Source: Setoptus koraiensis (Eukaryota; Animalia; Arthropoda). Taken from it: a stretch of 64,000 nucleotides of DNA. A model generated the notes under the pieces. The model saw only the letters and a list, made by a program, of their open reading frames with translations, made no database searches and was not told the origin of the DNA. The DNA lies in assembly GCA_048013815.1 (NCBI GenBank), contig CM106586.1:10726001-10790000 (forward strand). Reading direction: 5' to 3'. The position numbers and the translations under genes were made by a program. Below, piece by piece: positions 1,613-62,927 of this stretch. The number at the start of each line of letters is the position of its first letter. The stretch's first letter is position 1.

Positions 1613-3364
1613 CTACATTCCGTATCCTCCCATACCACCCATGCCGCCCATTCCACCGCCCATGCCTCCCATATCGGGTTTGTCTTTGTTGGGTAGGTCA
1701 ACAATAACGGTCTCTGTGGTTGCGAGAAGCGAGGCGACACCGGCAGCATCCATAAGGGCAGTTCTGACGACTTTGGTGGGATCGATAATACCCGCTTGAA
1801 TCAAGTTGCAGTACTCTCCTTTCATGGCATCATAACCGAATGCTGCTTCATTGTTATCCTGAACTGTCTTAAGTACGCGACTGACGTCGACACCGGCATT
1901 ACGTGCAATAGTGGCACAAGGAACTGTGAGCGATAGCCTGATAATACTAACACCAACTCTTTGATCTTCGTTGATTGGTTTCAACTCGTCTAGGGCTGGA
2001 ATACAACGGATGAGGGCAGTGCCACCACCTGGAACAATACCTTCTTGGACAGCGGCCCTAGTTGCGCATAGAGCGTCGTTGACACGATCCTTCTTTTCGT
2101 TCACCTCGACCTCTGAGGCGCCACCAATTTTGAGCACGGCCACTCCTGACGAGAGACGGGCCAGCCTCTCGTTGAGTTTTTCCTTTTCATATTCAGAGTT
2201 AGATTCTTCGATTTCGTCTTTAATCATATCGGTCCTTCTCTTGATGTGATGTTCGTCGCCTTTGCCCTTCAGCAACAGTGTGTCGTCTTTGGTGATGATG
2301 ACCTCTCCGACTTCGCCCAAGTGTTCCTGTTTGATGTCTTCTAATTTTGTGAAGTTAGCGTCGTCGCCAAACACTATTCCGCCCGAGGCAACGGCAATAT
2401 CGTGTAGAGTTGCCTTCCTGTTGTCACCGAATCCTGGCGCCTTAACGGCACACACCTTGAGCTGTATCTTGGGATGCAATCTGTTGTACACAAGCGTTGT
2501 GAGTGCGTCGCCATCAATATCTTCGGCGATGATAAGCAGGGGTTTTTGTTGTGAGTTGGCCAATTCTAGGGCGGGCACAAGCGACTGCACCGAGCTAATT
2601 TTTTTCTCCGACAACAATATGAGACAGTCCTGGAACTCGCACTTGGCCCCCTTGGCAGCATTGATGAAATAGGGCGAAATGTAGCCCCTGTCGAATTTCA
2701 TGCCCTCGATGATTTCCAGTTCGTCGTCGAGCGTCTTGGCGTCCTTGACGGTGATGACGCCGTCCTTGCCCACCTTCTTCATAGCGTTAGAGATGAGATC
2801 GCCGATGGTTTTGTCGCCGTTGGCCGATATGGTGGCCACTTGTGAGATCTCGTCGGGGTTGTTTATTTGTGTGGCCATTTTCTTGAGCTGTTCCACCACC
2901 TTTTCCACGGCCATCATCATGCCCTTGCGCACCTCGATGGGGTTGGAGCCGGTCTCGATGCGATCGAAGCCGAGCCTGGCGATGCTGCGAGCGAGCACCG
3001 TTGCGGTGGTGGTTCCGTCGCCCGCCTGCTCGTTTGTGTTGTTGGCCACGTCCTGAACCAGCCGGGCGCCAATGTTCTCGAATTTATCCTTCAGTTCGAC
3101 GGCCTTGGCCACTGTCACGCCGTCCTTGGTTATCTTTGGTCCGCCCCACGATTGCTCGATGATGGCATTGCGGCCCTTTGGTCCCATGGTGGCGGCAACG
3201 GCGTCCGCTAGCACGTCTACGCCTCGCATCATCATTTGACGGGGCTCCTTGCCCATTCGCACGTCCTTGGCAAAGAATCGTTGCTGCTGGTGGCCGGCAC
3301 ACACTGACGCAATTCGCAAGTTTTTAGACCACGCGAGCACACCAACTCTTGTGATTAGCGACAT
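1613..3364 (-). CDS. HSPD1: Mitochondrial chaperonin Hsp60, intronless
   Basis: 583-aa ORF with transit-peptide-like N-terminus, [41 protein letters not shown] and C-terminal GGM repeats. Confidence 0.97.
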
Positions 3365-4228
3365 GGTGTTGAGAGCTTGTTGTGACTGACGATGTGTGAT
3401 TGGTAGTTGTAATTGATTGGATCTGTGTGTGACAGACTGATGAATGTGTGATTGTTCGAGTTTATATGCTGTATGGTGTATAAAATTAAGTATTTAATTA
3501 ATTAATTAGGGGCTGTAACAAGACGGAGACTATAGTGACCGATCGTGCGCTATACGTAAATGGATAGAGAACAAAGAAGTGAGAGAAAATCGTGGTCGCC
3601 GACAGCATGGTTCGCAAATGGAACTTTCACGACCAAACACATGCGCTTAGGCGTGTTTTTTCTAGAAAGAAACACGAGCATTACGCATGGACCGTGGCTT
3701 GCACCGCTGTGCGCTCCCTGCCCCCCAGAAGCCACACGCAAAACGCTTGGGCGTGCACACATGTGCAGGGGGAAGCGGCCGTTGCTGCTTGCTCGATGGT
3801 TAGCAGCACTCTCTACCACTCGTGTGGTCATGTGTGGCATACTGCGCATAGTTGCGATTGCGCGACGGGCGCAGCAATCCAAAGCTGACCTCTTCAGGCC
3901 GATTTGCAAACTCGTGCCAGCCAGCAAACAGCCAGCGAAATGGCGTTCGAACTTGGCGCGAACTTGACTTGGCCGAAATTGCGCGAAATTAGAGCGCCAC
4001 TAATTAGCGCATAATCCTATTGGTCGCGATGACTAATTAATCAATCAACAATCAACAATTTGGAGTGATAATTGGCGAATCAGCGGTAATTAGTTTAATA
4101 TGTTAATTTAATTTATCGTACAATTGTGAGTCACTCGGTTTGAGTGCGTGTGTGTCGGTTGCATGTGAGACAATTACACTATATTATGTACAATCAGCGG
4201 AATCTTCGTTGTTGCTTCTGGCCACAAT

Positions 4229-7113
4229 TCACATGAAAGAAGATATAGCAGCCATAAGCAGCAAACTCAGCAAACAAGCGCCATATGAAACACTATTTAC
4301 ACCTGTCCTAAACTGGGACGCGGACGATGAAGACGACGACAACTTGAAATAGTAGTGATTGTTGGAGCCTCTCTCAGTGGGCACTAGCTTGGCGGGGGCG
4401 GCTGTGGCTGCGGCATCGTTGCTGATGGTGGCATCGTTTATGTGGGTGCCGTAAATCTTGGGGCTCGTTGTGTCCGAGTCGGAATGTAGCGACCACAGGG
4501 AGTTAGTGTCGTCGGTCTCAATCATTTCATTTCTAACATTCATGTCCAAATTGTCGTTGTCCTGGGCCCACAGCGACGGCGACAAAGGCTCGCGCCTGAG
4601 CTCATCCTCCAGCGAGTAGGGCCGGCCGTCGGGCGCGTTGCCCAGGCCCCCACTGAAGGGCAGCCTCTTCTGGGCCAAATTGGAAGCCGTGCACCCGAAC
4701 CACCACTCGCCTGTCGGTCTGGGGAACTGGGGCCTGCCTCTGGGCTCCACCTGCATTGGGGCGAGAAGATTTTTTGTGTTACTATTTCGTCTCAATGGCA
4801 AACGACTGACACGTGACACATTGGCACAACTGAATGGCGCCCAGCTTACCTTGAACTCGTGATCGTTGAACCTGTAGTACTGGTTGCCCTTGAAGAAATA
4901 GGTGATGTTGTTGTCCCATTTGAAGGCGGCGTCTATGTGCGCCGGAATGCCCGACCACACCTTTATGGAGCGCGGATACTCGCTGCTGACCGGCGGCTCT
5001 GACTTGCTATCAAAGCGCCAATATTGTGCGCCCTTGAATATGTACGTTCGTCCGTTTCCGCTCCAAACGAAAGCTGCGTCAATGTCGTTGGGTATGCCCG
5101 CAAAGCCCGTACTAATGAGCTTCGGGTAGCCATTGTCGCGCTTCTTGTTGCGGAAGCGCCAGTATTTGTTGCCCTTGAAAAAGAAGGTCTTGCCGTCGGC
5201 CCAGGTAAGGGCCGCGTTCAGGTTGCCCGGCAGACCGTCCCAGTCGGCGGATATGCGACGCGGATAATCTTTGGCCACGCCGTCGGCCGTGAGCAGCCAA
5301 TAGTGGTCGCCCTTGAACACGTACGACTGACCGTCCTCTGTGCGCGTCACCGTGTCCATTCGCGAATCGGCGCACAAATTCAACTGGGGCCCGGCGAGCG
5401 GGTCGTCGTCTTGGTCGTCGCTGTTGTCGTTGGCACCGATTGTTTCATGCTGGCCGCCGTCAGCGCCACCCTGATTGGTGGCCAGATCGTCGTCGTTGGT
5501 CTCGTGACGACGCCCGTGCACCAGCGACGGCCTCGAGGTGCTGGTCGTGGTGCTGGTAGTGGTTGTGCTGGTTGTGGTTGTGCTGGTTGCGGCGTCTGCC
5601 GCGGCGTGATAATTGAACGACGACGACGACGACATCGGGTCCATAGAGTGACTTTTGGTGCCGTACAGCGCCTGTATGGCCATTATGTCGTCCTCGTGTA
5701 TCTTGAAGTTTGGCTTGTATTTCTGATAGAAGGGCGCCATCAGGGCCTCGCGAACGCTGCTGTGGCCCAGTCCGAGCGAGTGACCCAGCTCGTGCGCGGC
5801 CACCTGAAAGATGTTTGTGCCCGCGTACGAGTCTATGGTCCAGTATTCCTGGTCGTCGAAATGAGCGTCGCCGCCGTATTGCGGAAAATAGGCATGCGCC
5901 AGGGTGTTGCCGGGCCCGTCGAATGCGTCCCCGTCGCCGTGATCGCCACTAGCAAACCGGATGTCGATGTGTACGCGACCGTCGCGCTTCACAATAAAAT
6001 CGATGGGCGCCACCTGGGACCAGACGCCGAACGCCATGGCGATCTGTTGATCGACCTCTTCGCGCCTGTTCAGGTACCTGGTCGGGTACTGCGATATCCG
6101 GTATGTGAGCTCTTGGCGTCTCCATTTGCTGCCCTGTAACGCGTACCGTTTCTTGCGCCGGCGGGGCCCCACGAGCGAGCCCAAATTGGCGCGCCTCGAT
6201 CTGTTGCCGCGGGCTTGGTGAGCCGTGTGCGGATGGTGTGCGTGGCCGCCACCGCTGAGCCAAAGCGGTTGCCCGAACGTGGCTCGTTGCGAGCCGAGCG
6301 GCTGAGCCGAGGGAGCGGCCAGGTCCTTGTTGCCGCACCGGGGCACCCGCATGAAATATTGGGTCTTGTTGTCGAGCAGGCCGGACTCGTTGAGGCCCGC
6401 GAAGCGCTGGAACGACTTGATGGCGCTCTGAAAGGACAGCTCTGTCACCAGATTGGCCGTCGTGGAGAATGTCTCACTCATGTAGCCGAACTTTTGTAGG
6501 TAGGTCTGCGCGCGCGCAACATTAATCGATTAGTTGATTGTGTCAGCCGGAAGTGATATGGTCAGTGATTAATTGGGCGTTGGTCGGTTGATCGAGCAGT
6601 CGATCGAACACGGTTGTGGGTACTTACCAAGGCGTTGATTTCCTTCATGTTGGCAGCGTCTTGTCGGTACGCGGCGCCGGTGCTGTTGTGGTCTGACTTG
6701 GGGGCCGGCAAGTGGTTGGCAGGTTGCGATGCATTTGTTGCTGTCGGTGCTGTTGCTGCTGCTGTTGGCGGTGGTGGCGGTTGTGGCGGCGGCGGCTGGG
6801 CCGGTTTGGAATGTTGTTGGTGTGACGGTTGCAGGGGCGCGCAGTCGCTGACGGTGGCGCAAACGAGCAGGCTCAGCACGCCGATGCAGCTAATTAGCAG
6901 TTGCAATTGGTAGTGGTCACTGAAATTGTGTAGCCTAAACCTAAGCAGTTTGTTGGCGTCGTAAGAGTGCAAATAAATTGCAGTGGCCGATGTGCACTGT
7001 GTCGTCCGGTCGTGTCTGAGATCTCTGAATGTGCTTGGTGTGCTGGCGGGGCGCTTGCTGCGTTGGCCGCCGCCGCGGCCGCTGCGACCAGCGCCGGAAG
7101 TGGCCATTAACAT
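4229..7113 (-). CDS. Mmp1: Matrix metalloproteinase 1-like; exons 7113-6628, 6505-4850, 4750-4229 (887 aa)
   Basis: Cysteine switch PRCGNKD, furin site RRRKKR, zinc motif HELGHSLGLGH, Met-turn ALMAPFY, Thr-rich hinge, hemopexin repeats ending WWFGC, hydrophobic C-terminal tail. GT-AG introns 6627-6506 and 4849-4751, both phase 0 and frame-consistent. Confidence 0.92.
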
Positions 7114-8347
7114 AAATTAGCCTCTAATAAATTAGCTGTTGAGTTGAGTTTGGTGCTTGCACGAGCGCGAGAGCAACAGGTAGAGATGGCTCTGATGAAA
7201 GGGCTGCTGATATGACGCTGCTGATTACGATTGGTCAGTTGGGCCACTCGTCGCTGGCACTGGCTCATAAGCGACTGAGGCGTTGCGCATGCCGCACACT
7301 CGACGTAGTTGTTGTTGCTGTTGCTGTTGTTGTTGGTGTTGCTGTCGTTGTAGCTGTTGCTGTCGTCGTAGCTGTTGCTGTCGTTGTTGTTGCTGTTGTT
7401 GCTGCTGCCGCTATGGTGAGAGATTGAGCGATTTATAAGATGCGCAAGATGCCTCGATGGAGTGTGTGTCGATTTGCACAGACAGATCACATAATTGCAT
7501 CATCGTATCATCACCGTTGCAAAATTGAATGTTGCGTGACGATGGCCGCCTGCACAGTGACCGCCGATGGCCAGGTGAGCGCGATTACACGTGAATAGGC
7601 ATAACGTTGTGTGTGAGCAACAATTTTTCGTCTTGCGTCTTGAGGCGTCCTGTCTTGGCCCTTGGCGTATGTGCCCACGATATATTCACAATCTGGCCAC
7701 AATACACTCTCAATATACTCTCAATCTGCTCGCAAACGGCTATCGGGATGCGGCTTGCGTCCCGACGTGTGACTAATTGAGATTGCGCCCAGATGAACTC
7801 GGCTAACTTGACCTTGGCCGCAGCCGATGTTATGTTATTCTGCTGCTGCTGCTTGCGATACAAACAAATGTAACTCTTTCTTTTGATACGATGCTGTTGC
7901 CGGTGTAATGTTGCTGTTGTTGTTGCCGCGAATACGAAATTATCTCAATTACGCGCATGTTACCTGCGACACGACGCTAATATAATGATTGGCGCAACAG
8001 ATTGGCGAAACTAGCGACTGGCAACGCTCAAAAACGTCGCTTCTCTTATTATCATCTTATACCACTGGACAACTGACGCAACGCAGCAAGGCCACACCAG
8101 TTCACCCTACCACCTGTCGTTAAGTTAATAGGCGCCGCTTCGGATGCCGCTTCGAACGCCGCTTCGGAAGCCGCTGCCTGAAGCGGAATTATTTTTATTA
8201 TTCTTTGTGCAACTTGTCTGCGCACTCAACAACGCCGGCAACAGCATCAACAACAACAACAACCAGCAAGTGGTGGTAATGTCCTTTAGCGCGCACCGAC
8301 ACACATCACTCCTTCCTATTGTGTCAAGATCAGACTATTTATATTAC

Positions 8348-8350
<3 letters not shown>

Positions 8351-8397
<47 letters not shown>
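8351..8397. repeat. (CA)n microsatellite
   Basis: About 23 perfect AC units. Confidence 0.95.
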
Positions 8398-8401
<4 letters not shown>

Positions 8402-10644
8402 CAGTTAGACAACTGGCCGGCGCCAGATCCGCTGCTGCTGCCGTCGCCGCCACTCAACAACAGGTAGCAGCCGTGGGTACAAGATACACCAAAGGCTCGC
8501 CATTGCCGTTACTATTGTCCGCCGATCCGATGATGATGAACTGTCTCACTTTTGTCTAACTAGTGCTGCTATTCTCTTCTGCAGCAGTGCTTCTTAACCC
8601 CTGCACGATAGAACCCGGCCAGCTCACATTACGTAACCATGCAAACAGCCACCTGTTACAAACGGCAACTGCAACAACAACAACAACAACAGCGAGCTGC
8701 CATGTCAACTACTCCAATGCCAGTCAGGTGCAGAGCATTACTTGTTTCTCTTTGTTGTTCATTCATCATCAAGTTGCTTTGTTGCCTCGGCTGTTGATGT
8801 CGTTGTTGCTGCCGCTGCCGTTGTTGTTGTTGTTGTTGATGCTGTTGATGCTGTTGTTGTTGTTGGTGCTGCTGTTGCTGTTGTGTGTCTCATTCGCATC
8901 TTACTATCGTGCCTCAAATAGCCACCGTAGTAATAATAGCACACTATTATTACTCACCTCGCATCTATCTATATTCACAAGCTATAGAGATGTAGCTTGG
9001 CAACTCTTGCAACCATCCAATCATCTATTCACCATAAATATAGTAACCATGTTTATTTATATTGTGTGTGCGCTTCTAAGAGGTCAAGTTTATGCTTCAA
9101 TTCTTTCTCTATCTCATTCAAAGAGCATTCACTTCTTCATTCAAGTTCAAGTCTAGGTACAGTCTATCTAGCGTAGCTCACCTCAACCGCTACTAGGCTT
9201 TTCAAGGTTCATCCCGATTACTATACTAAAATGAAACCACTTATCATTATTATTATTATTATTACAACTTTATGTGATTGTGTGTGTGTGTGTGTGTGTG
9301 TGTGTTTATTTGTGTATAGTGATGCAACACAATTTCAAAAGAACGTTAATTCGGACCATAGCACTTTATATTGGACCACACACACAATAAACATTTTACA
9401 TCACATTCAACCACAAACAGATACATGACATATGATGCAATGGATGTTATGCAATGGACGAACAAGCGGGCTTGGCTCAAACAGGAAGTGTTACTCATTA
9501 AAATATACACACAACAAAGGATTGATGCGCTCATAGTAGGCACCTTCATGCTTATTATGCAATGTTATCAACATCATCATCATCATCATTTTATAATATT
9601 ACAACATGCGGCAAAGGTGACATGTACCTTGTCACGGGCAATATCAGCAGCATAATGCCATCAAGTTAGTCAGTTTTTACAGCTTTGTTGTCTCAAATAT
9701 ACAGTTCGACACAGTGCGATGATGGCCACTTCATTAGTTGTGGTCAAATTATTAATTAGCCACCACATGAACAAATGAAATAATGATAACAAAAAGGTCT
9801 ATTTGCATTTTTTGCTATTTCTATTGCTATGAATACATCCAGGTGGAAGGATTTTATTGACTAGACAGCTGCTGGCCGGAATCTAGCAATAGTATACGGT
9901 TTTAGCATATATCATATCCATAGCGGAAGCTTCATTGTCTATTAGCAACAATGAACAATACGTCAACTGGATCACCGAGGTCACGATCAATAAGGCTTCT
10001 GGTTCATAACACGCTAAACTGCTATTCTATATCTCTTCAATGGTTCCTACTAAATGTTTCTATTATCATTGCTGAATACTCTGCTACATATCAGCGTTTG
10101 TTGAAATTTAATTAAATATGTAAGGCATCAGAAATTGAGTCAAGCTCGTGATCGAAGCGAAAAAAAACATGTCGCTGTATAAATGCTAATGCTGCAGTGA
10201 TGTAGACATGCAGAAGATATAGAGCACACATTGTTTGATAAAAACCGATCAATATTTTATCGTAACACTAACAAAGAAACAGTTTATATTGAAAGGAGGT
10301 TTGATGAGCATCGATCTTGTGTTCAATAATTTAGTTATTTTATTCAAATTCTCTCTCTAAACGATTTAAATATATATATATATTTACGTGTGGATTTTTC
10401 TATATATATCGTATAAATTGCAATTTATTATATAGTCTTTGTCGAGATGATAATTATGTCATCATTATTAAAACACTAACGAGAAATTGAAATACGATTA
10501 AATCTCATCTTAAGCTTCGTTCATCGTCGTAATTCATTGTCCATTGTTGTGAGAACCAGAAATGCTTTCTTTTCATTCGTCGTCCTCTTCCCTCTCTAGC
10601 AAAACTTCGTTCAAATCTGGCTCATCACAACAATTGATTGATTG

Positions 10645-15492
<4,848 letters not shown>

Positions 15493-16157
15493 CTAAAAAA
15501 ATGTAAATGTTGTTTTGTTTGGTATTGTGGGTGTTGGGTGTTGGTATCGAATGTGATCGATTGTCGCCTTATGGACTACATATGCTGGAAGTGACTATCT
15601 TGGTTCATGGTCGTGTATTATCGTGTCGCTCATTGAAAACAATTGATTTAAAATAATAAAACAATTAATAATAAATTAATTAAAATGTAATAATGGTATA
15701 ATAGTGGTAATAATTAATAATAATAATAATATTGGTGTCGTCAGGTCGTCTGCGTTTGTTTGTTCGCTTGTTTTGGTTTATGTTTTGATTTTAATTGTTC
15801 CTCTATCGTCACGATCCTCATTCCTGGGGTGATTGTGGCTTGTTTCCTATTGTTGTTATTGTGATTATGAGTGTATAGTGCCACAATTAATCCTATGTAC
15901 GTATTAGATGGCAATCCAATCTGGGCATATCCATTCGATCGTGTATCATACACGGTGTATGTGTGTGTCCGTGTGTGTGTGTGTGCTTGTGTGTATGTAC
16001 ACCTAGTAGTGGTAGTGGTGGTGGTGGTGGTGGAAACAAATAAATATCCCCTCTGTTGTTCTTTTCTATATCTTTCTATATCCCTAAATATATACTGGAG
16101 CGTATATATGTATATATATATATATAAATACTGGAGTATATTAATCTATGTTTGTTG

Positions 16158-16176
16158 TGTATGTGTGTGTGTGTGT

Positions 16177-16215
<39 letters not shown>
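16158..16215. repeat. (TG)n microsatellite
   Basis: Long, nearly perfect GT run. Confidence 0.9.
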
Positions 16216-16217
<2 letters not shown>

Positions 16218-16575
16218 TGTTTGTGACGATAAATATATGTGTATTTTCTAGGTAGCAATAGTTGTGTGATGATGATAATATTAATAAGTAATGGTGGTAG
16301 CTAGATAATAATAATAATAGCAATAATAATAGTAATGGTGATTTTGTCACTAATGAATAAGACGACAACGACGACGACGACGGCAATGATGCTTGGGCTT
16401 AATAAATATATATCATCGTCAGTGTGTAGAGTGTGTATAGAGAATAAGCGAATAACGAATGTGCAGCAGCAGCCGTAGTAGGCGCAGCGCTAGCAGTGCC
16501 AGTGGAATTGTTCAGCGAGAGAGGGAAAGAAGTGTATTATCAAGGCACAAGTAATTTACCATTACAGTTCTATTC

Positions 16576-16634
<59 letters not shown>
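16576..16634. repeat. (TG)n microsatellite
   Basis: GT run with one CG interruption. Confidence 0.9.
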
Positions 16635-16636
<2 letters not shown>

Positions 16637-17573
16637 CAGCAGCGGGCAACAACTGCAGCAGAGCAGCAGCAGCGCCAGCAGCAGTTGCCGCAGTTACAGC
16701 AGTTGAGCTGCAAGCGGGGTGTCAAGCGCAAGTGGGCCATTACCCACACATTGTGCTACATTGCCTTTGCCACTGCATTTGCCCCATAGCACGATGGGGC
16801 CTGTGTGGGCACAGTTCGTGCGCAAGCGGCGCACGCCCGCCTGAGCACTGTTACGCGGGCACACATCGAGCGTTGAAGCGGGCGCACGACAGCCAGCGCA
16901 GCGCCGAACACAGCACGCTCTGTGCTTGTGCGCGGCGCAGGGTGCTTTTTAGCCTGTCCAGTTGCGCTGGCCACCCTATATGTTCGCTGTGTGTCCAATA
17001 CAGCAGCGTACTGCCATAGCAGCAACATCTTTCGTAAGTGAGCGCTTGTGTACTTTAGAATTGAGTGTGTCTCTTTTTTACTGACAGTCTGTGTGTGTGT
17101 GTCCCACGCATTGAGATTGCGTTCCTCTAGTGCTTGTGGGCATTGTGTGCTTGTGTGCATTTGCATCACCGATACCGTCGCCGCCGCCGCAACACAACAC
17201 ACACACACACAGACAAGAATTTAAGGTGTGATGGTTTTCTGGGCGAATCAACTCTTGTGCTGCTGTCGCTGTCGTCGTCGTGGTCGCTGTTGTTGTTGTT
17301 GTTGTTGTCGTCGTTGTTGTTGTTGTCGTCGGCAGCGGCGATCATGTTGTTGATGTTGTTGCCGTATGATTCGGCCGCCGCCGCCGCTCAAGTTCAGCCG
17401 GGCCGGCGCTGCTGTCCTAAACGACGATCACAATGAAGAGCAGCGGCAGGTTCGCTCCGCAAATTGTTGTCCACTTGTTTGTGTACCCAGTGCCCAGTGG
17501 CCCGCACGAGTGCTTGTGTGCTTTTTCGTGTTCGCAGCAAGCCAGCCTATAATCATCGCAGTGCTCTGTCCAG

Positions 17574-17654
17574 CAGAGTCTGTTCAGAAGAGTCTGTTCA
17601 GCAGAGTCAGTCCAACAGAGTCTGTTCAACAGAGTCTGTTCAACAGAGTCTGTT
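17574..17654. repeat. Degenerate minisatellite of CAGAGTCTGTTCA(A/G) units
   Basis: About five imperfect tandem copies visible. Confidence 0.75.
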
Positions 17655-19009
17655 GTGTTTGTTCTGTTTCGGCCCGTTCCGTTGCGTCGTTCGCTGGCTC
17701 GCCAGCGAATCATCGGCTCGGCCAGCCAGCCGCCAGCCAGCCAGTTAGCCAGCGACACGGCGCAGCGGACAGGGCGAGCATATGTGTGCGAGTATTGCAT
17801 AATAGTGGCGAGTGTGTTTGCAATTTTCATCTTTCTCTCTCCCCGACATTGGCTGCACAAAACCCGACTGCACTCGTTGTGCGATGATGACGACGATAGC
17901 ACTAATCACTGACCAGCGCACACTTGTAACTGCATTGTCTATCCGCCGCACACAAGCTCGCCGCGCTGTGCCTCACCGTTGCAGTGGACAGTGGCGGCGG
18001 CCGCGGCCAGGTCGCAACAAGCGAGCGGCCAGCGGATGACGTTTTCAGTTCGGATCATTGACTGGCCCGAGTGCTCCTAATAGAGGTGTCGCCTCCATTG
18101 TGCGCCGCCGCCGCCGCTCGCCGCTGCTCGTCGCAGCCCTTGCCAGCCGCCAGCCAGCAGTTTGCGAGCAGCAATCACCGTGTTAAGCATCTTACAATGC
18201 AGCAAGGGCGAATAATAAAAAAATGACAGGCCCTCGTTCTGTTACAAGTCCCGCTCGCTGCATGCTCCGTGTGTGCATATGAACCGCCTATTACGCAAGT
18301 CGTCTACATGCACACGGAATCATCGTTGTCGACGTTGACGTTGTCCGTGCGTGTGTGTGTGTGTGCGTGTGTGTGTGCGTGTGTGTGCAGAGATTTCGAA
18401 CGCTTCTCTCGCGAACTCTTTATGCGTTAGCTGGCTCGCAGCCGCGGTGGCGCTCGACACTGGCTTGCGGTGGGTGCGTAGTGTGCGCTCGGGCCGCATG
18501 CGGCGCCAGTTGACACTCGCGAGTCGCCAGCGATTAATGGTCACCGATGACCGCATTTACAAGCCGCCGCTAGCCAATGCGACAACCGAAATCACTGGCT
18601 CGCTCTCTCATTTCCCATTCACTCTCTCGTCGCGGCTCAATTTATTCGAATGGCCCACTTCTCTGTCCGGTCTGGCGGGCCGGCCGCCGCCGCCGCGAGC
18701 CGCATAGAGATAAGACACGACGACTGTGCGCGACGGGTTCAATCGGAGCACGCACGTTCTCTATCTGTCAAAGGCAGCCAATCAGCGGGCAAGACAGCGA
18801 CAAATAGGGGCGGATGGGGGCGAGAATCGCGGCCTGTCAATCTATGTGTACGCATCGTTGGTCAGCCGCTGTCGTGCACAGCGCGCACTGCGCCTCTATG
18901 CTGCACTGCAGTGCACATAGCGATTGCCTCGGCTGGCCATCGAGCCCCGATAATGAAGCAGCCAGTTTAAAATGCGACTGCCGCAGTCGGACTGCGCCGC
19001 GCGCAGTCC

Positions 19010-56805: not shown

Positions 56806-57305
56806 NNNNNNNNNNNNNNNNNNNNNNNNNNNNNNNNNNNNNNNNNNNNNNNNNNNNNNNNNNNNNNNNNNNNNNNNNNNNNNNNNNNNNNNNNNNNNNN
56901 NNNNNNNNNNNNNNNNNNNNNNNNNNNNNNNNNNNNNNNNNNNNNNNNNNNNNNNNNNNNNNNNNNNNNNNNNNNNNNNNNNNNNNNNNNNNNNNNNNNN
57001 NNNNNNNNNNNNNNNNNNNNNNNNNNNNNNNNNNNNNNNNNNNNNNNNNNNNNNNNNNNNNNNNNNNNNNNNNNNNNNNNNNNNNNNNNNNNNNNNNNNN
57101 NNNNNNNNNNNNNNNNNNNNNNNNNNNNNNNNNNNNNNNNNNNNNNNNNNNNNNNNNNNNNNNNNNNNNNNNNNNNNNNNNNNNNNNNNNNNNNNNNNNN
57201 NNNNNNNNNNNNNNNNNNNNNNNNNNNNNNNNNNNNNNNNNNNNNNNNNNNNNNNNNNNNNNNNNNNNNNNNNNNNNNNNNNNNNNNNNNNNNNNNNNNN
57301 NNNNN
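56806..57305. other. Assembly gap (500 N)
   Basis: Run of exactly 500 N. Confidence 0.99.
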
Positions 57306-57557
57306 CGCGGAATGAGCAGTTGGTATGTAAACAATGTGCTCTAGAAGACCGCATTTTTTTATCCGTTCCTATTTTGAAAATGGCGCTCGAGATCAGATAA
57401 TCTGAATATTTCTTCTCGTACTGATGGATGTCATTAATCGTTATTCTTCTATTGTGGAAAGCCGAGCAATCAATTTTACATTTAGTTACATTACTCACTC
57501 ATAGAAATTATTCAAGCCCAACCTGAATATGAAATAAATGACAAGCTTCGTCCAATA

Positions 57558-59574
57558 ATGTGTATGTCATGGGAAGACTATGTCAAACAGAGTGTCTTAT
57601 TTGTAAACAAATCGAATGCCCTCAATGATTCATGGTGTTTGAGGAAATCAATGGGAACCAGGTGTGACTCTTCTGAATTAATCGACATCGATCTAATAGG
57701 CTTACACTGTACAAAAGCAAGTAGCGGAAGTGACATCGATCAAGCTACGCTCCAAACTCTTCTGAACGGAATACTAAAAGAGGTGAGATTTTCAAACACA
57801 CTATCACTATAATTTATTTAATCGAGCTCTCCAACTATTTGAACGGCAACATTCTTGTTCAGCATCGAACTTCTAACACGGAGTTACCTTGAGTGAATCA
57901 CAAGTGAGAATAAATTTGCAGAAACACAATGGAACGAAAGATTTTATCCGAAAAAGATATGTTATACTGGACCAAATTCAGTGTCGGTTACAACGAACTC
58001 TCAACTTTTATCACAAAATTGAACGAAAAACTTAAACGCACTCACGACAAACATATCAATTCAAAGTACGTTATAGTAAATCCCACATTAAGTAAAGTGG
58101 CAAGCCTACTTGGACAATTGAGTCAATCGACTGCTGAAGTAGAGCCAGCCTTAGATAAGCACCAGAGATTTGGAAATATAGCCTTCAGAACATGGTATGA
58201 TATTATGGTAGAATGTTGTGATCAGCACCTTCAACAACTTGTGAGCAATGAGGTGCTTCGCGCTGAGCTGCTCACTTATCTCACAGATTCTTTTGGTAAT
58301 AAGCAAAGAATCGACTACGGCACAGGACACGAGCTTTCATTTATGATCTTTCTCATGGGTCTGGTCAAATGTGTCTTGAATGCAAAAGATACCGGAGATG
58401 AATTGCAAGGCCCGGAAAACAACAAGTTACAAGAGCATGAATTTGATCTGATCGCTTTGTTTGGCTTCCATTACATGCCTCTATGTCGCAAAATTCAAGC
58501 TAGATATCGCCTTGAGCCAGCTGGTAGTCACGGCGTTTATAGTTTGGACGATTTTCAATTTTTGCCTTTCCTTTTTGGTTCAGCCCAACTCATCGATCAT
58601 CCCACAATTCAGACGTCAACCTATCCCGAGAGACAAGTGGCCGAGAAATATAAAGATGACTTTTTGTTTCACGCTGCCATATATTGCACTCATGTGATGA
58701 AGAAAGGCCCCTTTGCAGAACACTCCAATCAGCTATGGAACATAAGCGCGGTAGAGGAATGGTCAAAAATCAATAGAGGATTGATGCGAAAATATCTCAA
58801 TGAAGTGATGGGCAAATTTCCCATCGTACAACACCTGAAGTTTGGTCAATTTATTCTGATCTGGTCGAGATGATCAACTTACCAATCGTTGCACCTATGA
58901 CACATGAGAAATGTCATGAGCATCATCAATCTCATACTATCTTTTTTATTCTCTTATTGTGCTAATACATTATTATATCATAACCAAAGGTCAGCGTAGG
59001 AGATCTTATGTTGGCAAGTAGTCAATTAATTGTCGATCAAAAAGAAGCTAGCTCTAGTGAAGATGTCACGGTATTGCGATGTGATTATAACATAATTTTT
59101 AGCACAAGCTATGAAGTTCCTATATTGTACTTTAATGTGTATCACCAAGGTATGATTATATGCTGAATATTAAGAAAATACTCTCCACTGCGGTTTAATG
59201 AATAAAGTTCTAACAATCTTAATATCATTATCGCTTGCGTCATATTATTTATTTAATATATTCCAGATGGATCTCCCTTGCAAATAGAGGAAATTTGCCG
59301 GGTACTCTCCATCAATGATAACTGTGAATTGATAAAAAGAGGCAAATCAGTGGATAGTGAGATAGAGACCCGAAGTTTGCAGGATTTGGGATCGATTATA
59401 ACTCAGTTCGAGCATCCAATTCTTTTTCGGCCCTACTATGCTATACATCCTTGTAAGACGAGTGATTTGATGCATCAGGTCGATTGCTCTGGTGATAACT
59501 ACTTGATTGCCTGGCTGAGCGCACTCGGAACTTTGATCAATCTTCGACTGGACAATAGATACTGTGAAATATAA
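57558..59574 (+). CDS. ATG10: Autophagy E2-like enzyme ATG10; exons 57558-57782, 58990-59149, 59267-59574 (230 aa)
   Basis: Exon 1 MSWEDYVKQSVLFVNKSNALNDSW resembles ATG10 N-termini; exon 2 YNIIFSTSYEVPILYFN; exon 3 QFEHPILFRPYYAIHPCKT (catalytic Cys) and NYLIAWLS. Introns 57783-58989 (GTGAGA...AAAG, phase 0) and 59150-59266 (GTATGA...TTCCAG, phase 1) keep the frame (693 nt total). Confidence 0.85.
57929..58873 (+). CDS. PTPA: PP2A phosphatase activator PTPA (PPP2R4/Rrd), intronless, nested in ATG10 intron 1
   Basis: RFGNIAFRTW, SFGNKQRIDYGTGHELSF, YRLEPAGSHGVYSLDDFQFLPFLFGSAQL, KKGPFAEHSNQLWNISAV, KFPIVQHLKFG. Confidence 0.96.
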   Translation: MERKILSEKDMLYWTKFSVGYNELSTFITKLNEKLKRTHDKHINSKYVIVNPTLSKVASLLGQLSQSTAEVEPALDKHQRFGNIAFRTWYDIMVECCDQHLQQLVSNEVLRAELLTYLTDSFGNKQRIDYGTGHELSFMIFLMGLVKCVLNAKDTGDELQGPENNKLQEHEFDLIALFGFHYMPLCRKIQARYRLEPAGSHGVYSLDDFQFLPFLFGSAQLIDHPTIQTSTYPERQVAEKYKDDFLFHAAIYCTHVMKKGPFAEHSNQLWNISAVEEWSKINRGLMRKYLNEVMGKFPIVQHLKFGQFILIWSR

Positions 59575-60134: not shown

Positions 60135-62927
60135 TTAGAGTTTTGGCCTAACTTTACCTTTCCATTCTGTAGCTTTAATTGTGATCGGTTTCTGGTAGAA
60201 GCATCTATCCAAGAAGCCATCCATTGTTCTGAACAGATGTAATCTCACATCGCTCAACGAATGATCGGAATCAGGATACAATTGTGTCTGATGAATGACG
60301 CCGCCCACGACATGATGCTCAGTGAGGGCCTTTATAAATTGCATTGAATGCTGAACGTGGACCCTCTCATCGGCCGTTCCATGAATTATGAGAACTTTCC
60401 TAGTGGCAAAGTCGTAGCCTCGCTTCAATAGATTGGCCTTTTCATATTTGAGATTGTTTGAATCAATCCATGGCAAGCCCAGAAAATGTTCCGCCGTGTA
60501 GGTGTCCAAATATTTGAAATTTGTTATTGGTGCCACAGCAATGGTGCACTGAATGGATTTTGTGTCATCATCGGCAGTGGTGGCGAGGGCAACATAAGAC
60601 GAAGTTGATGTCGGGCCCCAAATTGCAATTCGTTTCCTGTCTATAAAAGGGAAATCGTCCACGGCATCAATCAGATATCTGATGACATCCACTTGATCCT
60701 TTGAATTAAACACAGGCGATGTCGATATAAATCTGACGTCATTGTCTGTTGAGCCAAACGATGAGCTCGAGGCCAAATTTCTTGCCCTAATACAATCAAT
60801 TTTGATATAAACAAGCTGCTTCCTGCTAGCCAAATATTTTCCCCAATCAATCTCGAATTTGCTCCAAACGTTGCGATGCTCCAAATCGGAGGACTCTATC
60901 AACAACGGGAATCGTTTGTCTTTCTCTTCTTCAATTTCCGTGGGCAGATACATTTTCATGTGAACATCGTAGGGCAATTGATTATCCATTTTGAGCACAA
61001 TTAGCTTCTCTTGGGGCAGTTGTTTCGCTTGCAATATTTGCTCTATGTGAACATTTGTTCCCAAAACAAACGCACTAGTCAAATTGGCTAAGAAGCGTAG
61101 CCTTATGACAGGCACAGAGGGTCCCAAACATTCGTGTACCATATATTGGGCCCCAAAAGGACTCACGTGTGAGTTACTGTAGCCACAGGGCTCTCTCAGG
61201 TTGCACGTGAGACATTCCGCCCGGCGTGCCTGCAATAGACTAGCCTGAGTGATACGATACAAATGCCTCTCAGGCTGGCGGGTACTCTTGGCCTCGTAAT
61301 ACAGACTGTCCGACATAGAATCGTATAGGACTAGCCTGTCGACGTCGTATTCGCCGTAAGTTAAAAATTTCACGTAACGTTCCCCTGCCCTAACCATGGC
61401 TATGTGATAATGATCGCCAATGTCCGAATCGGGCCTGGGCAATGCAAGAAACGTCAATCTTGTTTGATTTTGATTATAGCCCGTGATTATAGTCTGCTTT
61501 GAGTTTTTCATGATGGGTATTTTCTGATTGAATATAGTCAACATTTCGCATGTCCATTGTTCGCCCGGTGACGCCGGTCGGCTATTCCAGAAGCCACTGC
61601 CTGAGCTACTTCCGGCGGATTGTTTGTTGCCACATAGCGACAATAGGGATGAGTTTTGTGCTCTCGATGACCACATGACTAGCAGTTCGTTTGTTGGTAG
61701 CCACTCAACGTATGTGATGTAGTGCAATAATCGACCGTCTTGTTGATTGGCTATAATTTCGTTTGGTGGCGTCACTTCGATAGGTTCGAAATTATTCGGA
61801 TAATTCAATCTGACCACATTGATTGCAATTCGTGGATTTTTAGCGCCAGCTCTAGGATAACGCTCATAATAGATCTTTGGGTTCACATTTGTGTCGGCAA
61901 TGTAGCTGTCGTAGTACTCTATGGGACTTGATTCAACCTGACTGTCGTCAAATGTAATATAAGCCAAATGGCTGGCATCCGGCGACCACCAAATGGCCGC
62001 GTCATTGGGATTGGTGTAGATGTTCAGACGATACAAACTATCCGGCATTCCGTTGGTGATTATGTTTGATTCGCCCGTTGTTGTGAGACGAACAATTTTG
62101 CTTTCTTTGGCCAGATCATGAATATAGTAAATATCATTGTTGTCAACGAAAACAATGGAGTTTGTTTCGCCCACCCAGGAAGCATATTGAAGTTTTGGAA
62201 CTTTCTGTGGATAATCCAGTTTGACCAGGTCGTCCAAAAATATAACAGTTCTGGAGGAAACAAATGACAACAAGTAAATTGAGTTATCCAGCCGAATGAT
62301 GTAGAATGGTTTACAAAATAGAGATTTAGTTGTGCATTACTCACTGTGAAGATATGTTGAAAATGGCAAATCGGCCCGAGACAGGCATGCCTAGCTCTTT
62401 CTTGAGATCCGACACGAACAATATCGACCTCCTGTCTGCCGATAGCTTAAAACTGGCCATTGTATGCAGAGTTTTATCTGATGTCTTTACCAGTATGGAT
62501 GTGGTCATGTTTATGCGGGCATCAAATATGGCGATACTGCCATTTTGGTCTACGTAGGCTATCTCATTGGCCGATATCCACGAGCCGTTGAATCTTTTCA
62601 CTCGATACTGGTCAGCTATGATGGGATCTAGGTCCAGTTTCATTCTGTAATTGTCGACATCGCTGTCTGTTAGAGTGTAAAGATTGTGCAAATTAATTCG
62701 AATCTGATTAATGCGAGATCAAACACAAACCATACTTCTGGCTTTGTATGTTGTTCAGCCTAGCTATACTCACTTGTGGTGGATAATATTATAGATAATA
62801 TGATGAGGCTTGATATTATGCTAATCATCAGCAACGATATCGAAATTCCCTTCCAATTCTTTTTCTCCTTCTCGCCGACAACAATGTCCTCGTCGTCCAG
62901 GGCTCCAACTTTGTGTTCGAAATCCAT
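60135..62927 (-). CDS. DPP10: DPP6/DPP10-like inactive dipeptidyl peptidase, type II membrane protein; exons 62927-62774, 62666-62345, 62250-60135 (863 aa)
   Basis: KNWKGISISLLMISIISSLIILSIIL signal anchor, beta-propeller motifs (AAIWWSPD, YPRAGAKNP), nucleophile elbow WGPTSTSSY instead of GWSYGG, HGTADERVH and YPDSDH. GT-AG introns in phases 1 and 2; total 2592 nt. Confidence 0.88.

What the first reader, a model, noticed from the sequence alone, without database searches (positions are those of the whole stretch)
57558..59574. PTPA is nested inside intron 1 of ATG10 on the same strand
The 84-aa ORF at 57558 begins with an ATG10-like N-terminus and has a GAG|GTGAGA donor at 57782/57783. It joins in phase 0 to the acceptor at 58989/58990, giving a complete 230-aa ATG10; the downstream exons have an in-frame stop just upstream and lack the N-terminus on their own. 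The whole 945-bp PTPA CDS fills the 1207-nt intron, with 146 bp on the 5' side and 116 bp on the 3' side. Same-strand nesting is rare, and a given transcript can yield either ATG10 (intron spliced out) or PTPA (intron retained or internal start), but not both. PP2A and its activators are established regulators of autophagy, so this could be a splicing-level switch between a PP2A activator and an autophagy E2.
Basis: partly seen in the sequence, partly recalled or inferred. Interest (0 to 1): 0.85.

Follow-up and report, generated by a model that had tools for sequence, protein, structure and literature searches.

The report
PTPA gene nested inside ATG10 intron
In this mite a complete, intron-free PP2A-activator gene (PTPA) sits inside the first intron of the autophagy gene ATG10 on the same strand; several distant mite groups share this layout, so it is old, and nothing yet shows that it acts as a regulatory switch.

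Summary
ATG10 has three exons (57558-57782, 58990-59149, 59267-59574; 693 nt, 230 aa). A 945-bp intronless PTPA ORF (57929-58873) lies in its 1,207-nt first intron, on the same strand.

Exon 1 is a real ATG10 N-terminus. It aligns with residues 7-30 of a fly ATG10 (E 2e-6). In a 90%-identical relative it keeps its length, frame and splice sites, with dN/dS 0.26. Two further relatives have ORFs ending at the same donor.

The main addition is that the nesting is not a local event. ATG10 exon 1 lies upstream of PTPA, and the remaining ATG10 exons lie downstream, in Oppia, Blomia, Dermatophagoides farinae and Halotydeus. NCBI already annotates ATG10 spanning PTPA in D. farinae. Dinothrombium has PTPA and a complete ATG10 in tandem. 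Spider-mite relatives and a tick have no ATG10 beside PTPA.

Public gene models wrongly fuse the two genes in Halotydeus and Blomia, and probably in Oppia.

RNA evidence is weak. Low-depth, RNA-like contigs cover PTPA without splicing, running from inside exon 1 to inside exon 2. ATG10 exon 3 is not covered and no junction was seen. The "PP2A/autophagy splicing switch" remains speculation.

Same-strand nesting of an intronless gene in a first intron is a known kind, as in ChAT/VAChT.

The parts
57325..57389 (+). Two sequence blocks upstream of ATG10 exon 1 conserved with the relative L001 (ATGTAAACAATGTGCTC at 57325; TTTTGAAAATGGCGCTCG at 57372). Candidate promoter region, possibly shared with the upstream minus-strand neighbour.
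   Evidence: The pairwise alignment shows near-perfect blocks in a region that is otherwise 61-65% identical. Coordinates. Function is inferred. The second motif is not enriched in the window.
57558..57782 (+). ATG10 exon 1: 75 codons, start ATG, phase-0 donor GAG|GTGAGA. Encodes the ATG10 N-terminal motif (W/F..Y/F...F...S....D.W).
   Evidence: Conserved in L001 with no indel, 79% nt identity and dN/dS 0.26. Two more relatives' ORFs, P0243 and P0244, end ...KEVR / ...TEVR, that is, at the same donor.
57783..58989 (+). ATG10 intron 1 (1,207 nt), which contains the whole PTPA coding sequence.
   Evidence: Canonical GT...AG ends, both conserved in L001. Phase-0 join verified.
57654..57928 (+). 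A 275-nt stretch with no ATG in any frame directly upstream of the PTPA start. It spans the last 129 nt of ATG10 exon 1 and the 146-nt intron flank. Candidate PTPA 5' UTR.
   Evidence: the last ATG lies at 57651. The shuffle probability of zero ATGs is about 0.006. Only 17 of 1,136 ATG-to-ATG gaps in the window are this long. An RNA-like contig of run X4 runs unspliced from 57640 to 58052. L001 has one weak-context upstream ATG 10 nt before the start and is otherwise ATG-free for 259 nt.
57866..57903 (+). Conserved block in the 5' intron flank (CGAACTTC ... GAGTTACCTT ... TGAATCACAA), 26-63 nt upstream of the PTPA ATG. Candidate PTPA core promoter or UTR element.
   Evidence: Alignment with L001; coordinates. 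Function is inferred.
57929..58873 (+). PTPA (PP2A phosphatase activator) gene: a single exon of 314 aa plus stop, with a strong start context acaATGG.
   Evidence: Pfam PF03095 E 8e-92. 3,989 homologues; best named hits are acariform mites at 49-54% identity. 90% aa identity and dN/dS 0.076 against L001. Covered by RNA-like contigs in runs X4 and X5.
58874..58989 (+). 3' flank of intron 1 (116 nt). PTPA 3' UTR at least up to 58985. It also holds the pyrimidine tract and branch region (CTAAT) and the acceptor of ATG10 intron 1. There is no AATAAA or ATTAAA here.
   Evidence: The X5 contig 58738-58985 has the same depth as the CDS. The X4 contig 58956-59107 crosses the acceptor unspliced. Hexamer scan; conserved block.
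58990..59149 (+). ATG10 exon 2 (160 nt), which carries the Y..I.(Y/F)S.SY.VP.LYF core motif.
   Evidence: PF03987 at 30.7 bits. 89% nt identity to L001 with no indel. Alignment.
59150..59266 (+). ATG10 intron 2 (117 nt). It holds the only AATAAA (59201-59206) in the 1 kb after the PTPA stop, conserved in position in L001 (7298). Possible PTPA poly(A) signal.
   Evidence: Use as a poly(A) signal is inferred. No read evidence exists beyond 59107 in the RNA-like runs.
59267..59574 (+). ATG10 exon 3, with the catalytic-cysteine motif HPCKT (Cys191, codon 59452-59454) and stop TAA 59572-59574.
   Evidence: PF03987 at 58.4 bits. BLASTP against Aedes ATG10 E 7e-21.. dN/dS of exons 2+3 is 0.125.

Best explanation
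**What it is.** This is a real host/nested gene pair. A three-exon ATG10 gene (230 aa, the E2-like enzyme of the ATG12 conjugation system) carries in its first intron a complete, selected, intronless PTPA gene (314 aa, activator of protein phosphatase 2A) in the same orientation.

**Age.** The arrangement is inherited, not local. It was most likely already present in the common ancestor of acariform mites. It later changed to a tandem PTPA-ATG10 pair in the velvet-mite lineage and to unlinked genes in spider-mite relatives.

**How it works (shown).** ATG10 protein needs an RNA that starts upstream of 57558 and joins 57782 to 58990, which removes PTPA. PTPA can only be translated from its own ATG at 57929 on RNA that keeps the intron. 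No in-frame fusion to exon 1 is possible.

**How it works (inferred).** The PTPA mRNA is not confined to the intron. It probably starts inside or just before the 3' part of ATG10 exon 1, around 57640-57660, ahead of a 275-nt ATG-free leader. It runs unspliced past the intron's acceptor into exon 2 and may end at the conserved AATAAA in ATG10 intron 2. The two genes would then be overlapping transcription units whose products are mutually exclusive outcomes of start-site, splice and poly(A) choice. PTPA is the more abundant product in the available data.
For: **Structure:**

**Exon 1 is an ATG10 N-terminus:** (E 2e-6; E 1e-5).

**Selection against relative L001:**
- dN/dS is 0.26 for exon 1, 0.125 for exons 2+3 and 0.076 for PTPA, at dS about 0.6-0.7.
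- Exons have no indels, whereas flanks and introns are 61-68% identical with gaps.
- All four splice sites are conserved.
- P0243 and P0244 from further relatives end at the same donor.

**Nesting elsewhere:**
- Oppia: exon 1 at 8001-8114, PTPA at 15867-16826, ATG10 exons at 17128-18004.
- Halotydeus: N-terminal exon about 7193-7345 (HMM E 1e-7), PTPA 8001-8927, ATG10 exons 9270-10035.
- Blomia and D. farinae: weaker N-terminal hits upstream (E 0.03 and 0.008) plus ATG10 exons just downstream.
- NCBI's own D. farinae annotation has an ATG10 CDS at 2358-10193 spanning PTPA at 8001-9198.

**Other states:**
- Tandem in Dinothrombium: the N-terminal motif and the core lie in one exon, 123 nt after the PTPA stop.
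- No ATG10 within 8-10 kb in Panonychus, Brevipalpus or the tick Ornithodoros, where PTPA is multi-exon.
- Acariform PTPAs form one clade with 100/100 support.

**No in-frame acceptor before the PTPA ATG:**

**RNA-like contigs:** X4 57640-58052 and 58956-59107, and X5 up to 58985, all unspliced with depth like the CDS. These runs do not hold ATG10 exon 3.

**ATG-free leader and conserved AATAAA:**
Against: - No spliced 57782-58990 junction was seen in any run.
- No spliced ATG10 product containing exon 1 exists in the 1.84-billion-protein library. Only exon-1-only ORFs were found.
- The runs taken as RNA (X4-X6) are of 'guessed' type and very low depth (2-9). Their contigs could be unspliced pre-mRNA or even DNA.
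- The long ATG-free leader is not general among mites. Nearest upstream ATGs lie at 57-147 nt in most species.
- The position of poly(A) hexamers differs between species. Oppia and Blomia have signals inside the intron.
- The polarity nested-to-tandem rests on parsimony over a mite phylogeny that I did not test. The window's lineage sits on a long, unplaced branch.
- The exon-1 hits in Blomia and D. farinae are weak on their own.
Confidence: 0.75

Rival explanations
1. Fully autonomous nested gene. PTPA has its own promoter within the 146-nt 5' flank and its own poly(A) site within the 116-nt 3' flank. ATG10 transcription simply reads through and splices it out. The two genes share nothing but DNA.
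For: - A conserved block at 57866-57903 lies 26-63 nt before the PTPA ATG and could be a core promoter.
- Oppia and Blomia have AATAAA or ATTAAA between the PTPA stop and ATG10 exon 2.
- In Oppia, 7.7 kb separate exon 1 from PTPA, which makes an internal promoter natural.
- The Panonychus PTPA works as a stand-alone single-exon gene.
Against: - The X4 contig is continuous from 57640 (inside exon 1) into PTPA at CDS-like depth. Another contig crosses the 58989/58990 acceptor into exon 2.
- There is no AATAAA or ATTAAA in the 116-nt flank of the window or of L001.
- The ATG-free stretch extends 129 nt into exon 1.
Confidence: 0.25
2. Cholinergic-locus-type single unit with a regulated switch. 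One promoter drives both genes. A regulated choice between splicing 57782-58990 and intron retention with early polyadenylation sets the PTPA:ATG10 ratio, coupling PP2A activation to autophagy.
For: - The geometry matches ChAT/VAChT: an intronless ORF in the first intron, on the same strand, deeply conserved (PMC7524744).
- The Oppia public model P0013 splices ATG10 exon 1 to an acceptor 12 nt before the PTPA ATG.
- An unspliced RNA-like contig links exon 1 to PTPA.
- The PTPA stop sits close (116-343 nt) to the next ATG10 exon in every nested or tandem species, even where the intron is 9 kb.
Against: - Transcripts carrying the ATG10 start codon would translate an 84-codon ORF and meet seven more ATGs before PTPA, so a fully shared first exon is a poor PTPA mRNA.
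- Exon 1 is coding, not a non-coding shared leader.
- The in-frame Oppia fusion is impossible in the window, L001, Blomia and D. farinae.
- The nesting was given up in Dinothrombium and in spider-mite relatives.
- No expression data under any condition were available.
- The functional link between PP2A and autophagy is general textbook knowledge, not evidence for this locus.
Confidence: 0.15
3. Exon 1 is not part of ATG10. ATG10 starts at the Met at 59008 in exon 2, and the 84-aa ORF at 57558 is an unrelated small ORF or upstream ORF of PTPA.
For: - No junction reads were found.
- Exon 1 has no Pfam hit.
- An in-frame ATG exists at 59008.
Against: - Exon 1 matches ATG10 N-termini at the right position.
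- It is under purifying selection in this frame only.
- It ends exactly at a conserved GTGAGA donor in four taxa.
- It joins exon 2 in phase.
- The same N-terminal motif lies upstream of PTPA in Oppia and Halotydeus and is annotated as part of ATG10 in D. farinae.
- In Dinothrombium the motif is contiguous with the core.
Confidence: 0.03
4. Recent retroposition of PTPA into the ATG10 intron in this mite's own lineage.
For: PTPA is intronless here, whereas the tick gene has introns.
Against: - PTPA is single-exon in Oppia, Halotydeus, Blomia, Panonychus, Brevipalpus and Dinothrombium. It has at most one short intron in D. farinae.
- The nesting is shared across both acariform orders.
- No poly(A) remnant follows the gene.
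Confidence: 0.02

Closest known systems
Cholinergic gene locus (ChAT hosting VAChT; cha-1/unc-17 in nematodes), as described for Ixodes ticks in PMC7524744
   Same: The complete ORF of one gene lies in a single exon inside the first intron of another gene, on the same strand. The arrangement is conserved over very long evolutionary time. The two mRNAs are mutually exclusive processing products.
   Different: In the cholinergic locus, exon 1 is demonstrably shared by both mRNAs and both products serve one pathway. Here exon 1 is coding for the host only and sharing is unproven. In this mite no in-frame join to PTPA exists. The two products have no direct common pathway.
Mammalian host/nested gene pairs with host-nested transcriptional interplay (PMC11694760)
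   Same: The nested gene sits in a 5' intron of its host. The same orientation is common in that survey. Premature or intronic polyadenylation and isoform choice of the host are linked to nested-gene expression.
   Different: Mammalian host introns are long. Here the intron is 1.2 kb with only 146 and 116 nt to spare, so promoter, UTRs and splice signals of the two genes must overlap.
NCBI annotation of Dermatophagoides farinae (assembly GCA_024713945.1): ATG10-domain CDS spanning the PTPA gene
   Same: The same two genes, the same strand and the same order: N-terminal ATG10 exon(s), then PTPA, then the remaining ATG10 exons.
   Different: The D. farinae intron is about 6.5 kb and the annotated ATG10 is 346 aa. 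The arrangement is present in the annotation only. I found no paper that describes it.
Tandem PTPA-ATG10 pair of Dinothrombium tinctorium (L012)
   Same: The same two genes on the same strand, with ATG10 sequence starting about 120 nt after the PTPA stop (123 nt there, 116 nt to the exon-2 acceptor here). ATG10 intron 2 is at the same position.
   Different: The ATG10 N-terminus is fused to the core in one exon downstream of PTPA, so nothing is nested. No relic exon 1 was found upstream.

Membership tests
ATG10 (E2-like enzyme, Pfam PF03987 Autophagy_act_C) | Match to PF03987 above the gathering score | tested here: met
   Exon 2 scores 30.7 bits and exon 3 scores 58.4 bits against a cut-off of 24.4. 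They cover profile positions 79-110 and 114-190 of 193.
ATG10 (E2-like enzyme, Pfam PF03987 Autophagy_act_C) | Catalytic cysteine in the HPC motif | tested here: met
   HPCKT with Cys191 (codon 59452-59454), aligned with HPC of insect, mollusc and Dinothrombium ATG10.
ATG10 (E2-like enzyme, Pfam PF03987 Autophagy_act_C) | ATG10-type N-terminus (F/Y...F...S....D.W) collinear with the core | tested here: met
   BLASTP E 2e-6 against Glossina residues 7-30. hhalign E 1e-5, probability 82%. Multiple alignment.
ATG10 (E2-like enzyme, Pfam PF03987 Autophagy_act_C) | ATG10 rather than ATG3 (both carry PF03987) | tested here: met
   Exon 3 against Aedes 'ubiquitin-like-conjugating enzyme ATG10' gives E 7e-21. 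All named hits of the mite/insect profile are ATG10. The 230-aa length fits ATG10. No direct comparison with ATG3 was run.
ATG10 (E2-like enzyme, Pfam PF03987 Autophagy_act_C) | Forms the ATG12 thioester and conjugates ATG12 to ATG5 | not testable with these tools
   This is a biochemical property.
PTPA (PP2A phosphatase activator, Pfam PF03095) | Full-length match to PF03095 | tested here: met
   E 8e-92, 308 bits, residues 2-309 on profile positions 2-291 of 293. 49-54% identity to named mite PTPAs. dN/dS 0.076.
Same-strand host/nested gene pair | Nested coding sequence lies wholly within one host intron, on the same strand | tested here: met
   PTPA 57929-58873 lies inside intron 57783-58989.
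Same-strand host/nested gene pair | Host mRNA that splices across the nested gene is observed | tested here: inconclusive
   No joint appeared in 4 runs. The RNA-like runs lack ATG10 exon 3 altogether. No spliced product exists in the protein library. The only support is the NCBI model in D. farinae, plus conserved splice sites and phase.
Cholinergic-locus-type unit (shared 5' exon, alternative splicing) | Both mRNAs share the first exon and promoter | tested here: inconclusive
   The X4 contig runs unspliced from 57640 in exon 1 into PTPA. The Oppia model joins exon 1 to PTPA. However, run type and depth are poor, and seven further ATGs in or after the ATG10 start would precede PTPA.
Cholinergic-locus-type unit (shared 5' exon, alternative splicing) | The two products act in one pathway | not tested
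   Only the general literature link between PP2A and autophagy exists. Nothing is specific to PTPA and ATG10.
Retrogene (processed copy) | Intronless copy of a gene that has introns in outgroups | tested here: met
   PTPA is single-exon in 8 acariform loci. It is multi-exon (3.6 kb for 313 aa) in the tick.
Retrogene (processed copy) | Poly(A) remnant, target-site duplications or an intron-bearing parent copy | tested here: not met
   No A-run follows the 3' flank. A parent copy could not be searched for genome-wide. At this age such marks would be erased, so retroposition stays possible but unproven.

The most novel reading that the evidence does not exclude
ATG10 and PTPA of acariform mites form one obligatorily coupled transcription unit, a second 'cholinergic-type' locus. 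A choice of start site, intron-1 splicing and intronic polyadenylation partitions a single promoter's output between a PP2A activator and an autophagy E2-like enzyme. This coupling, rather than mere difficulty of un-nesting, has kept the arrangement since the acariform ancestor.
Probability: 0.15. Interest if true: 0.65.

Novelty: new member of a known kind. Interest (0 to 1): 0.4.

Why it matters
1. **Gene-order evolution.** A same-strand nested pair of two housekeeping genes is held across both orders of acariform mites. Natural 'experiments' resolved it into a tandem pair (Dinothrombium) and into unlinked genes (spider-mite relatives). This offers a tractable system for asking how nested genes are expressed when only 146 and 116 nt separate them from host splice sites.

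2. **Database errors.** The arrangement corrupts public annotation.
   - The Halotydeus (507 aa) and Blomia (475 aa) entries named PP2A activator are PTPA-ATG10 chimeras.
   - The Oppia entry carries an ATG10 N-terminus on PTPA.
   - Gene counts of autophagy genes in mites that rely on such models will miss ATG10.

3. **A possible new coupled locus.** If PTPA and ATG10 really share a promoter, this would be a new example of the ChAT/VAChT type of locus, involving PP2A control and autophagy.

Tried and rejected
- **Junction reads.** The single read-laying run gave no joints. X1 is the DNA source and X2 looks like DNA. X4 and X5 cover PTPA only.
- **RNA runs holding ATG10 exon 3.**
- **Exact-protein look-up of the window's PTPA.** Not on record.
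- **Spliced ATG10 product in the protein library.** A profile search of 1.84 billion proteins with exon 1 found only exon-1-only ORFs of 76 and 86 aa, plus a spurious 1,598-aa hit.
- **In-frame exon 1-PTPA fusion as in the Oppia model.** Rejected for the window, L001, Blomia, D. farinae and Dinothrombium.
- **A common PTPA poly(A) rule across mites.** Hexamer positions differ between species.
- **ATG-free leader as a general mite feature.** Present in the window, L001 (apart from one weak-context upstream ATG) and Dinothrombium only.
- **Upstream motif AAAATGGCGCTCG as a recurrent promoter element.** Not enriched.
- **Finding named mite ATG10 proteins.** The word-based search returned only insects and other animals.
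- **Species names for the relatives.** None are given.
- **Guess of a compact eriophyoid-type genome.** Dropped.
- **Structure prediction of the spliced protein.** Not run, because the joined sequence has no reference and I did not type it.
Full report
**1. The observation**

- An ATG at 57558 opens a 75-codon stretch that ends AAAGAG at 57782, followed by GTGAGA.
- The acceptor ccaaag|GTC lies at 58989/58990, with an in-frame TAA two codons before it.
- Exon 2 ends at 59149 (GTATGA follows).
- Exon 3 runs from 59267 (after ttccag) to the TAA at 59572-59574.

Joined in a script, the three pieces give 693 nt and a 230-aa protein with one terminal stop. Intron 1 is 1,207 nt: 146 nt, then a 945-nt ORF (57929-58873), then 116 nt.

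Pfam results:
- The ORF is a full-length PTPA (PF03095, E 8e-92, profile positions 2-291 of 293).
- Exons 2 and 3 match the ATG3/ATG10 catalytic domain (PF03987, 30.7 and 58.4 bits, cut-off 24.4).
- Exon 1 has no Pfam match.

A 500-N assembly gap (56806-57305) lies 252 nt upstream of exon 1.

**2. Is exon 1 really the ATG10 N-terminus?**

Yes, on four lines of evidence.
- Its residues 3-26 align with residues 7-30 of Glossina ATG10 (BLASTP E 2e-6).
- A two-sequence exon-1 profile aligns with the N-terminus of a ten-species insect ATG10 profile (hhalign E 1e-5, probability 82%, columns 2-32 to 5-35).
- In a full alignment with insect, mollusc and Dinothrombium ATG10, the motif W/F..F/Y...F...S....D.W, the core Y..(I/V).(Y/F)S.SY.VP.LYF and the catalytic HPC (Cys191) all line up.
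- Exon 3 alone matches Aedes ATG10 at E 7e-21.

**3. Conservation in close relatives**

A Logan DNA contig from a relative (L001; PTPA 90% identical) has the same layout: exon 1 at 5623-5847, PTPA at 6001-6948, exon 2 at 7087-7246 and exon 3 at 7358-7667. All four splice sites are kept.

- Exons have no indels and are 79-89% identical.
- Upstream DNA, intron flanks and intron 2 are 61-68% identical with gaps.
- Nei-Gojobori dN/dS is 0.26 for exon 1 (0.13 for codons 1-32), 0.125 for exons 2+3 and 0.076 for PTPA, at dS about 0.6-0.7. The other two frames of exon 1 are full of stops.

A profile search of 1.84 billion proteins with exon 1 found two more relatives' ORFs, of 76 and 86 aa. Both end ...TEVR or ...KEVR. 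They therefore run into the same GTNAGR donor.

**4. The arrangement is old**

The PTPA homologue list held three odd public models:
- Halotydeus destructor, 507 aa: PTPA followed by the ATG10 core.
- Blomia tropicalis, 475 aa: the same kind of fusion.
- Oppia nitens, 361 aa: an ATG10-like N-terminus followed by PTPA.

I fetched the loci and mapped ATG10 pieces by tblastn and by an N-terminus HMM. All features lie on one strand.

| Species (locus) | ATG10 N-terminal exon | PTPA | Remaining ATG10 exons |
|---|---|---|---|
| Oppia (L002) | 8001-8114 | 15867-16826 | 17128-18004 |
| Halotydeus (L003) | about 7193-7345 (E 1e-7) | 8001-8927 | 9270-10035 |
| Blomia (L004) | candidate in 5933-6175 (E 0.03) | 8001-9059 | 9202-9814 |
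| D. farinae (L005) | piece in 2593-3036 (E 0.008) | 8001-9198 | 9385-10190 |

For D. farinae, NCBI's own annotation has a PF03987 CDS at 2358-10193 that spans PTPA. The same neighbours (SSDP upstream, ceramide-glucosyltransferase-type gene downstream) flank the pair in those four species.

Three other states were found.
- **Tandem, in Dinothrombium.** PTPA (10001-10939) is followed after 123 nt by a complete 204-aa ATG10. Its N-terminal motif and core lie in one exon. The intron at the window's intron-2 position is kept.
- **No ATG10 nearby, in spider-mite relatives.** Panonychus and Brevipalpus have a single-exon PTPA and no ATG10 within 8 kb.
- **Outgroup.** The tick Ornithodoros has a multi-exon PTPA and no ATG10 within 10 kb.

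Leptotrombidium shows no exon 1 in the 1.7 kb before PTPA, but its contig ends inside PTPA. Acariform PTPAs form one clade (100/100). The window's lineage sits on a long, unplaced branch within that clade.

By parsimony (inference), an intronless PTPA inside ATG10 intron 1 is ancestral for Acariformes. The tandem and unlinked states are then derived. If PTPA entered as a retrocopy, it did so before that radiation. No poly(A) remnant is left.

**5. How the two proteins can be made**

*Shown from the sequence.*
- No phase-0 acceptor in frame with PTPA exists between the exon-1 donor and the PTPA ATG, and a stop lies 15 nt before that ATG. PTPA must therefore be translated from 57929 (context acaATGG) on RNA that keeps the intron.
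- ATG10 needs the 57782-58990 splice.
- The in-frame Oppia fusion is a peculiarity of that species or of its model. It uses an acceptor 12 nt before the PTPA ATG.

*RNA evidence.* Six runs hold the region.
- X1 is evidently the DNA source.
- X2 and X3 are uniformly covered, like DNA.
- X4 and X5 (another label, one study) cover only 57640-59107. That study's runs (X4-X6) do not hold ATG10 exon 3. This is the pattern expected of RNA in which PTPA is expressed and ATG10 is rare.
- Their contigs are unspliced: 57640-58052 crosses the exon-1 donor, 58738-58985 covers the whole 3' flank at CDS-like depth, and 58956-59107 crosses the acceptor into exon 2.
- No joint was reported. Depths are only 2-9 and the run type is a guess.

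*Sequence hints.*
- The 275 nt before the PTPA ATG (57654-57928, including the last 129 nt of exon 1) contain no ATG. The shuffle probability is about 0.006, and only 17 of 1,136 ATG-to-ATG gaps in the window are this long.
- The 116-nt flank has no AATAAA or ATTAAA.
- The only AATAAA in the next kilobase lies in ATG10 intron 2 (59201) and is conserved in L001.

*Inference.* PTPA mRNA probably starts in or just before the 3' part of ATG10 exon 1 and extends into exon 2. The two genes would then be overlapping units with mutually exclusive processing.

These hints do not generalise across mites. A fully autonomous PTPA unit remains a serious rival. A conserved block at 57866-57903 could be its core promoter.

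**6. Comparison with what is known**

No paper in the searchable library holds ATG10, PTPA and 'nested' together.

The closest known system is the cholinergic locus. [quoted passage not shown]

In mouse and human, host/nested pairs involve over a tenth of genes. Nested genes prefer 5' introns, and same and opposite orientations are "broadly similar". Links to premature polyadenylation of the host have also been reported (PMC11694760).

Same-strand nesting as such is therefore not rare. This case is a new member of a known kind.

**7. Verdict**

- The structural interpretation is supported and extended to a deep conservation across acariform mites.
- The recent-retroposition idea is rejected.
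- The PP2A/autophagy switch is untested. It is weakened by lineages that gave up the nesting and by the poor suitability of an exon-1-containing RNA for PTPA translation.
- Practical by-product: three public gene models are chimeras caused by this arrangement.

Interest is moderate.

Noticed in passing
P0024 (Halotydeus destructor, L003:8001-10038), P0030 (Blomia tropicalis, L004:8001-9817), P0013 (Oppia nitens, L002:8001-16826): Public protein models named PP2A activator are chimeras of PTPA and ATG10. In the first two the PTPA C-terminus is spliced onto ATG10 exons. In the third, ATG10 exon 1 is spliced onto PTPA. Domain-based gene counts will miss ATG10 in these mites.
   Followed up: yes
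window 56806-57305: A 500-N assembly gap lies 252 nt upstream of ATG10 exon 1. In the relative, the corresponding place holds a minus-strand TSR2/WGG-domain gene (L001:4799-5242, PF10273 E 2e-21). That gene is therefore probably hidden in the gap and may share a bidirectional promoter with ATG10.
   Followed up: partly
L002, L003, L004, L005: Microsynteny is conserved around the pair in Oppia, Halotydeus, Blomia and D. farinae: SSDP gene upstream, then ATG10/PTPA, then a Glyco_transf_21 (ceramide glucosyltransferase-type) gene downstream. The window's lineage has different neighbours (TSR2, RPL23A and Noc2 upstream; LIM genes downstream in L001).
   Followed up: partly
L011 and L012 (Dinothrombium tinctorium, two contigs): Two near-identical contigs carry the same PTPA-ATG10 tandem and are probably haplotigs. 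ATG10 is annotated on only one of them, although tblastn finds it on both.
   Followed up: partly
window 60135-62273 (minus strand): A single-exon 712-aa ORF encodes a dipeptidyl-peptidase-IV-type serine peptidase (DPPIV_N E 6e-50, Peptidase_S9 E 4e-19), convergent with ATG10. The listed ORF starts at TTG, so the true ATG start was not determined.
   Followed up: partly
window 57909-57914: An AATAAA lies in the sense strand 127 nt after the exon-1 donor and 15 nt before the PTPA ATG. It is not conserved in L001. If used, it would truncate ATG10 pre-mRNA before PTPA.
   Followed up: no
L008:5149-5790 (Brevipalpus obovatus): An unannotated-family 192-aa gene lies on the same strand just upstream of the single-exon PTPA. 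Its length is ATG10-like, but it has no Pfam hit on record, no tblastn match to ATG10 and no match to the ATG10 N-terminus HMM.
   Followed up: partly
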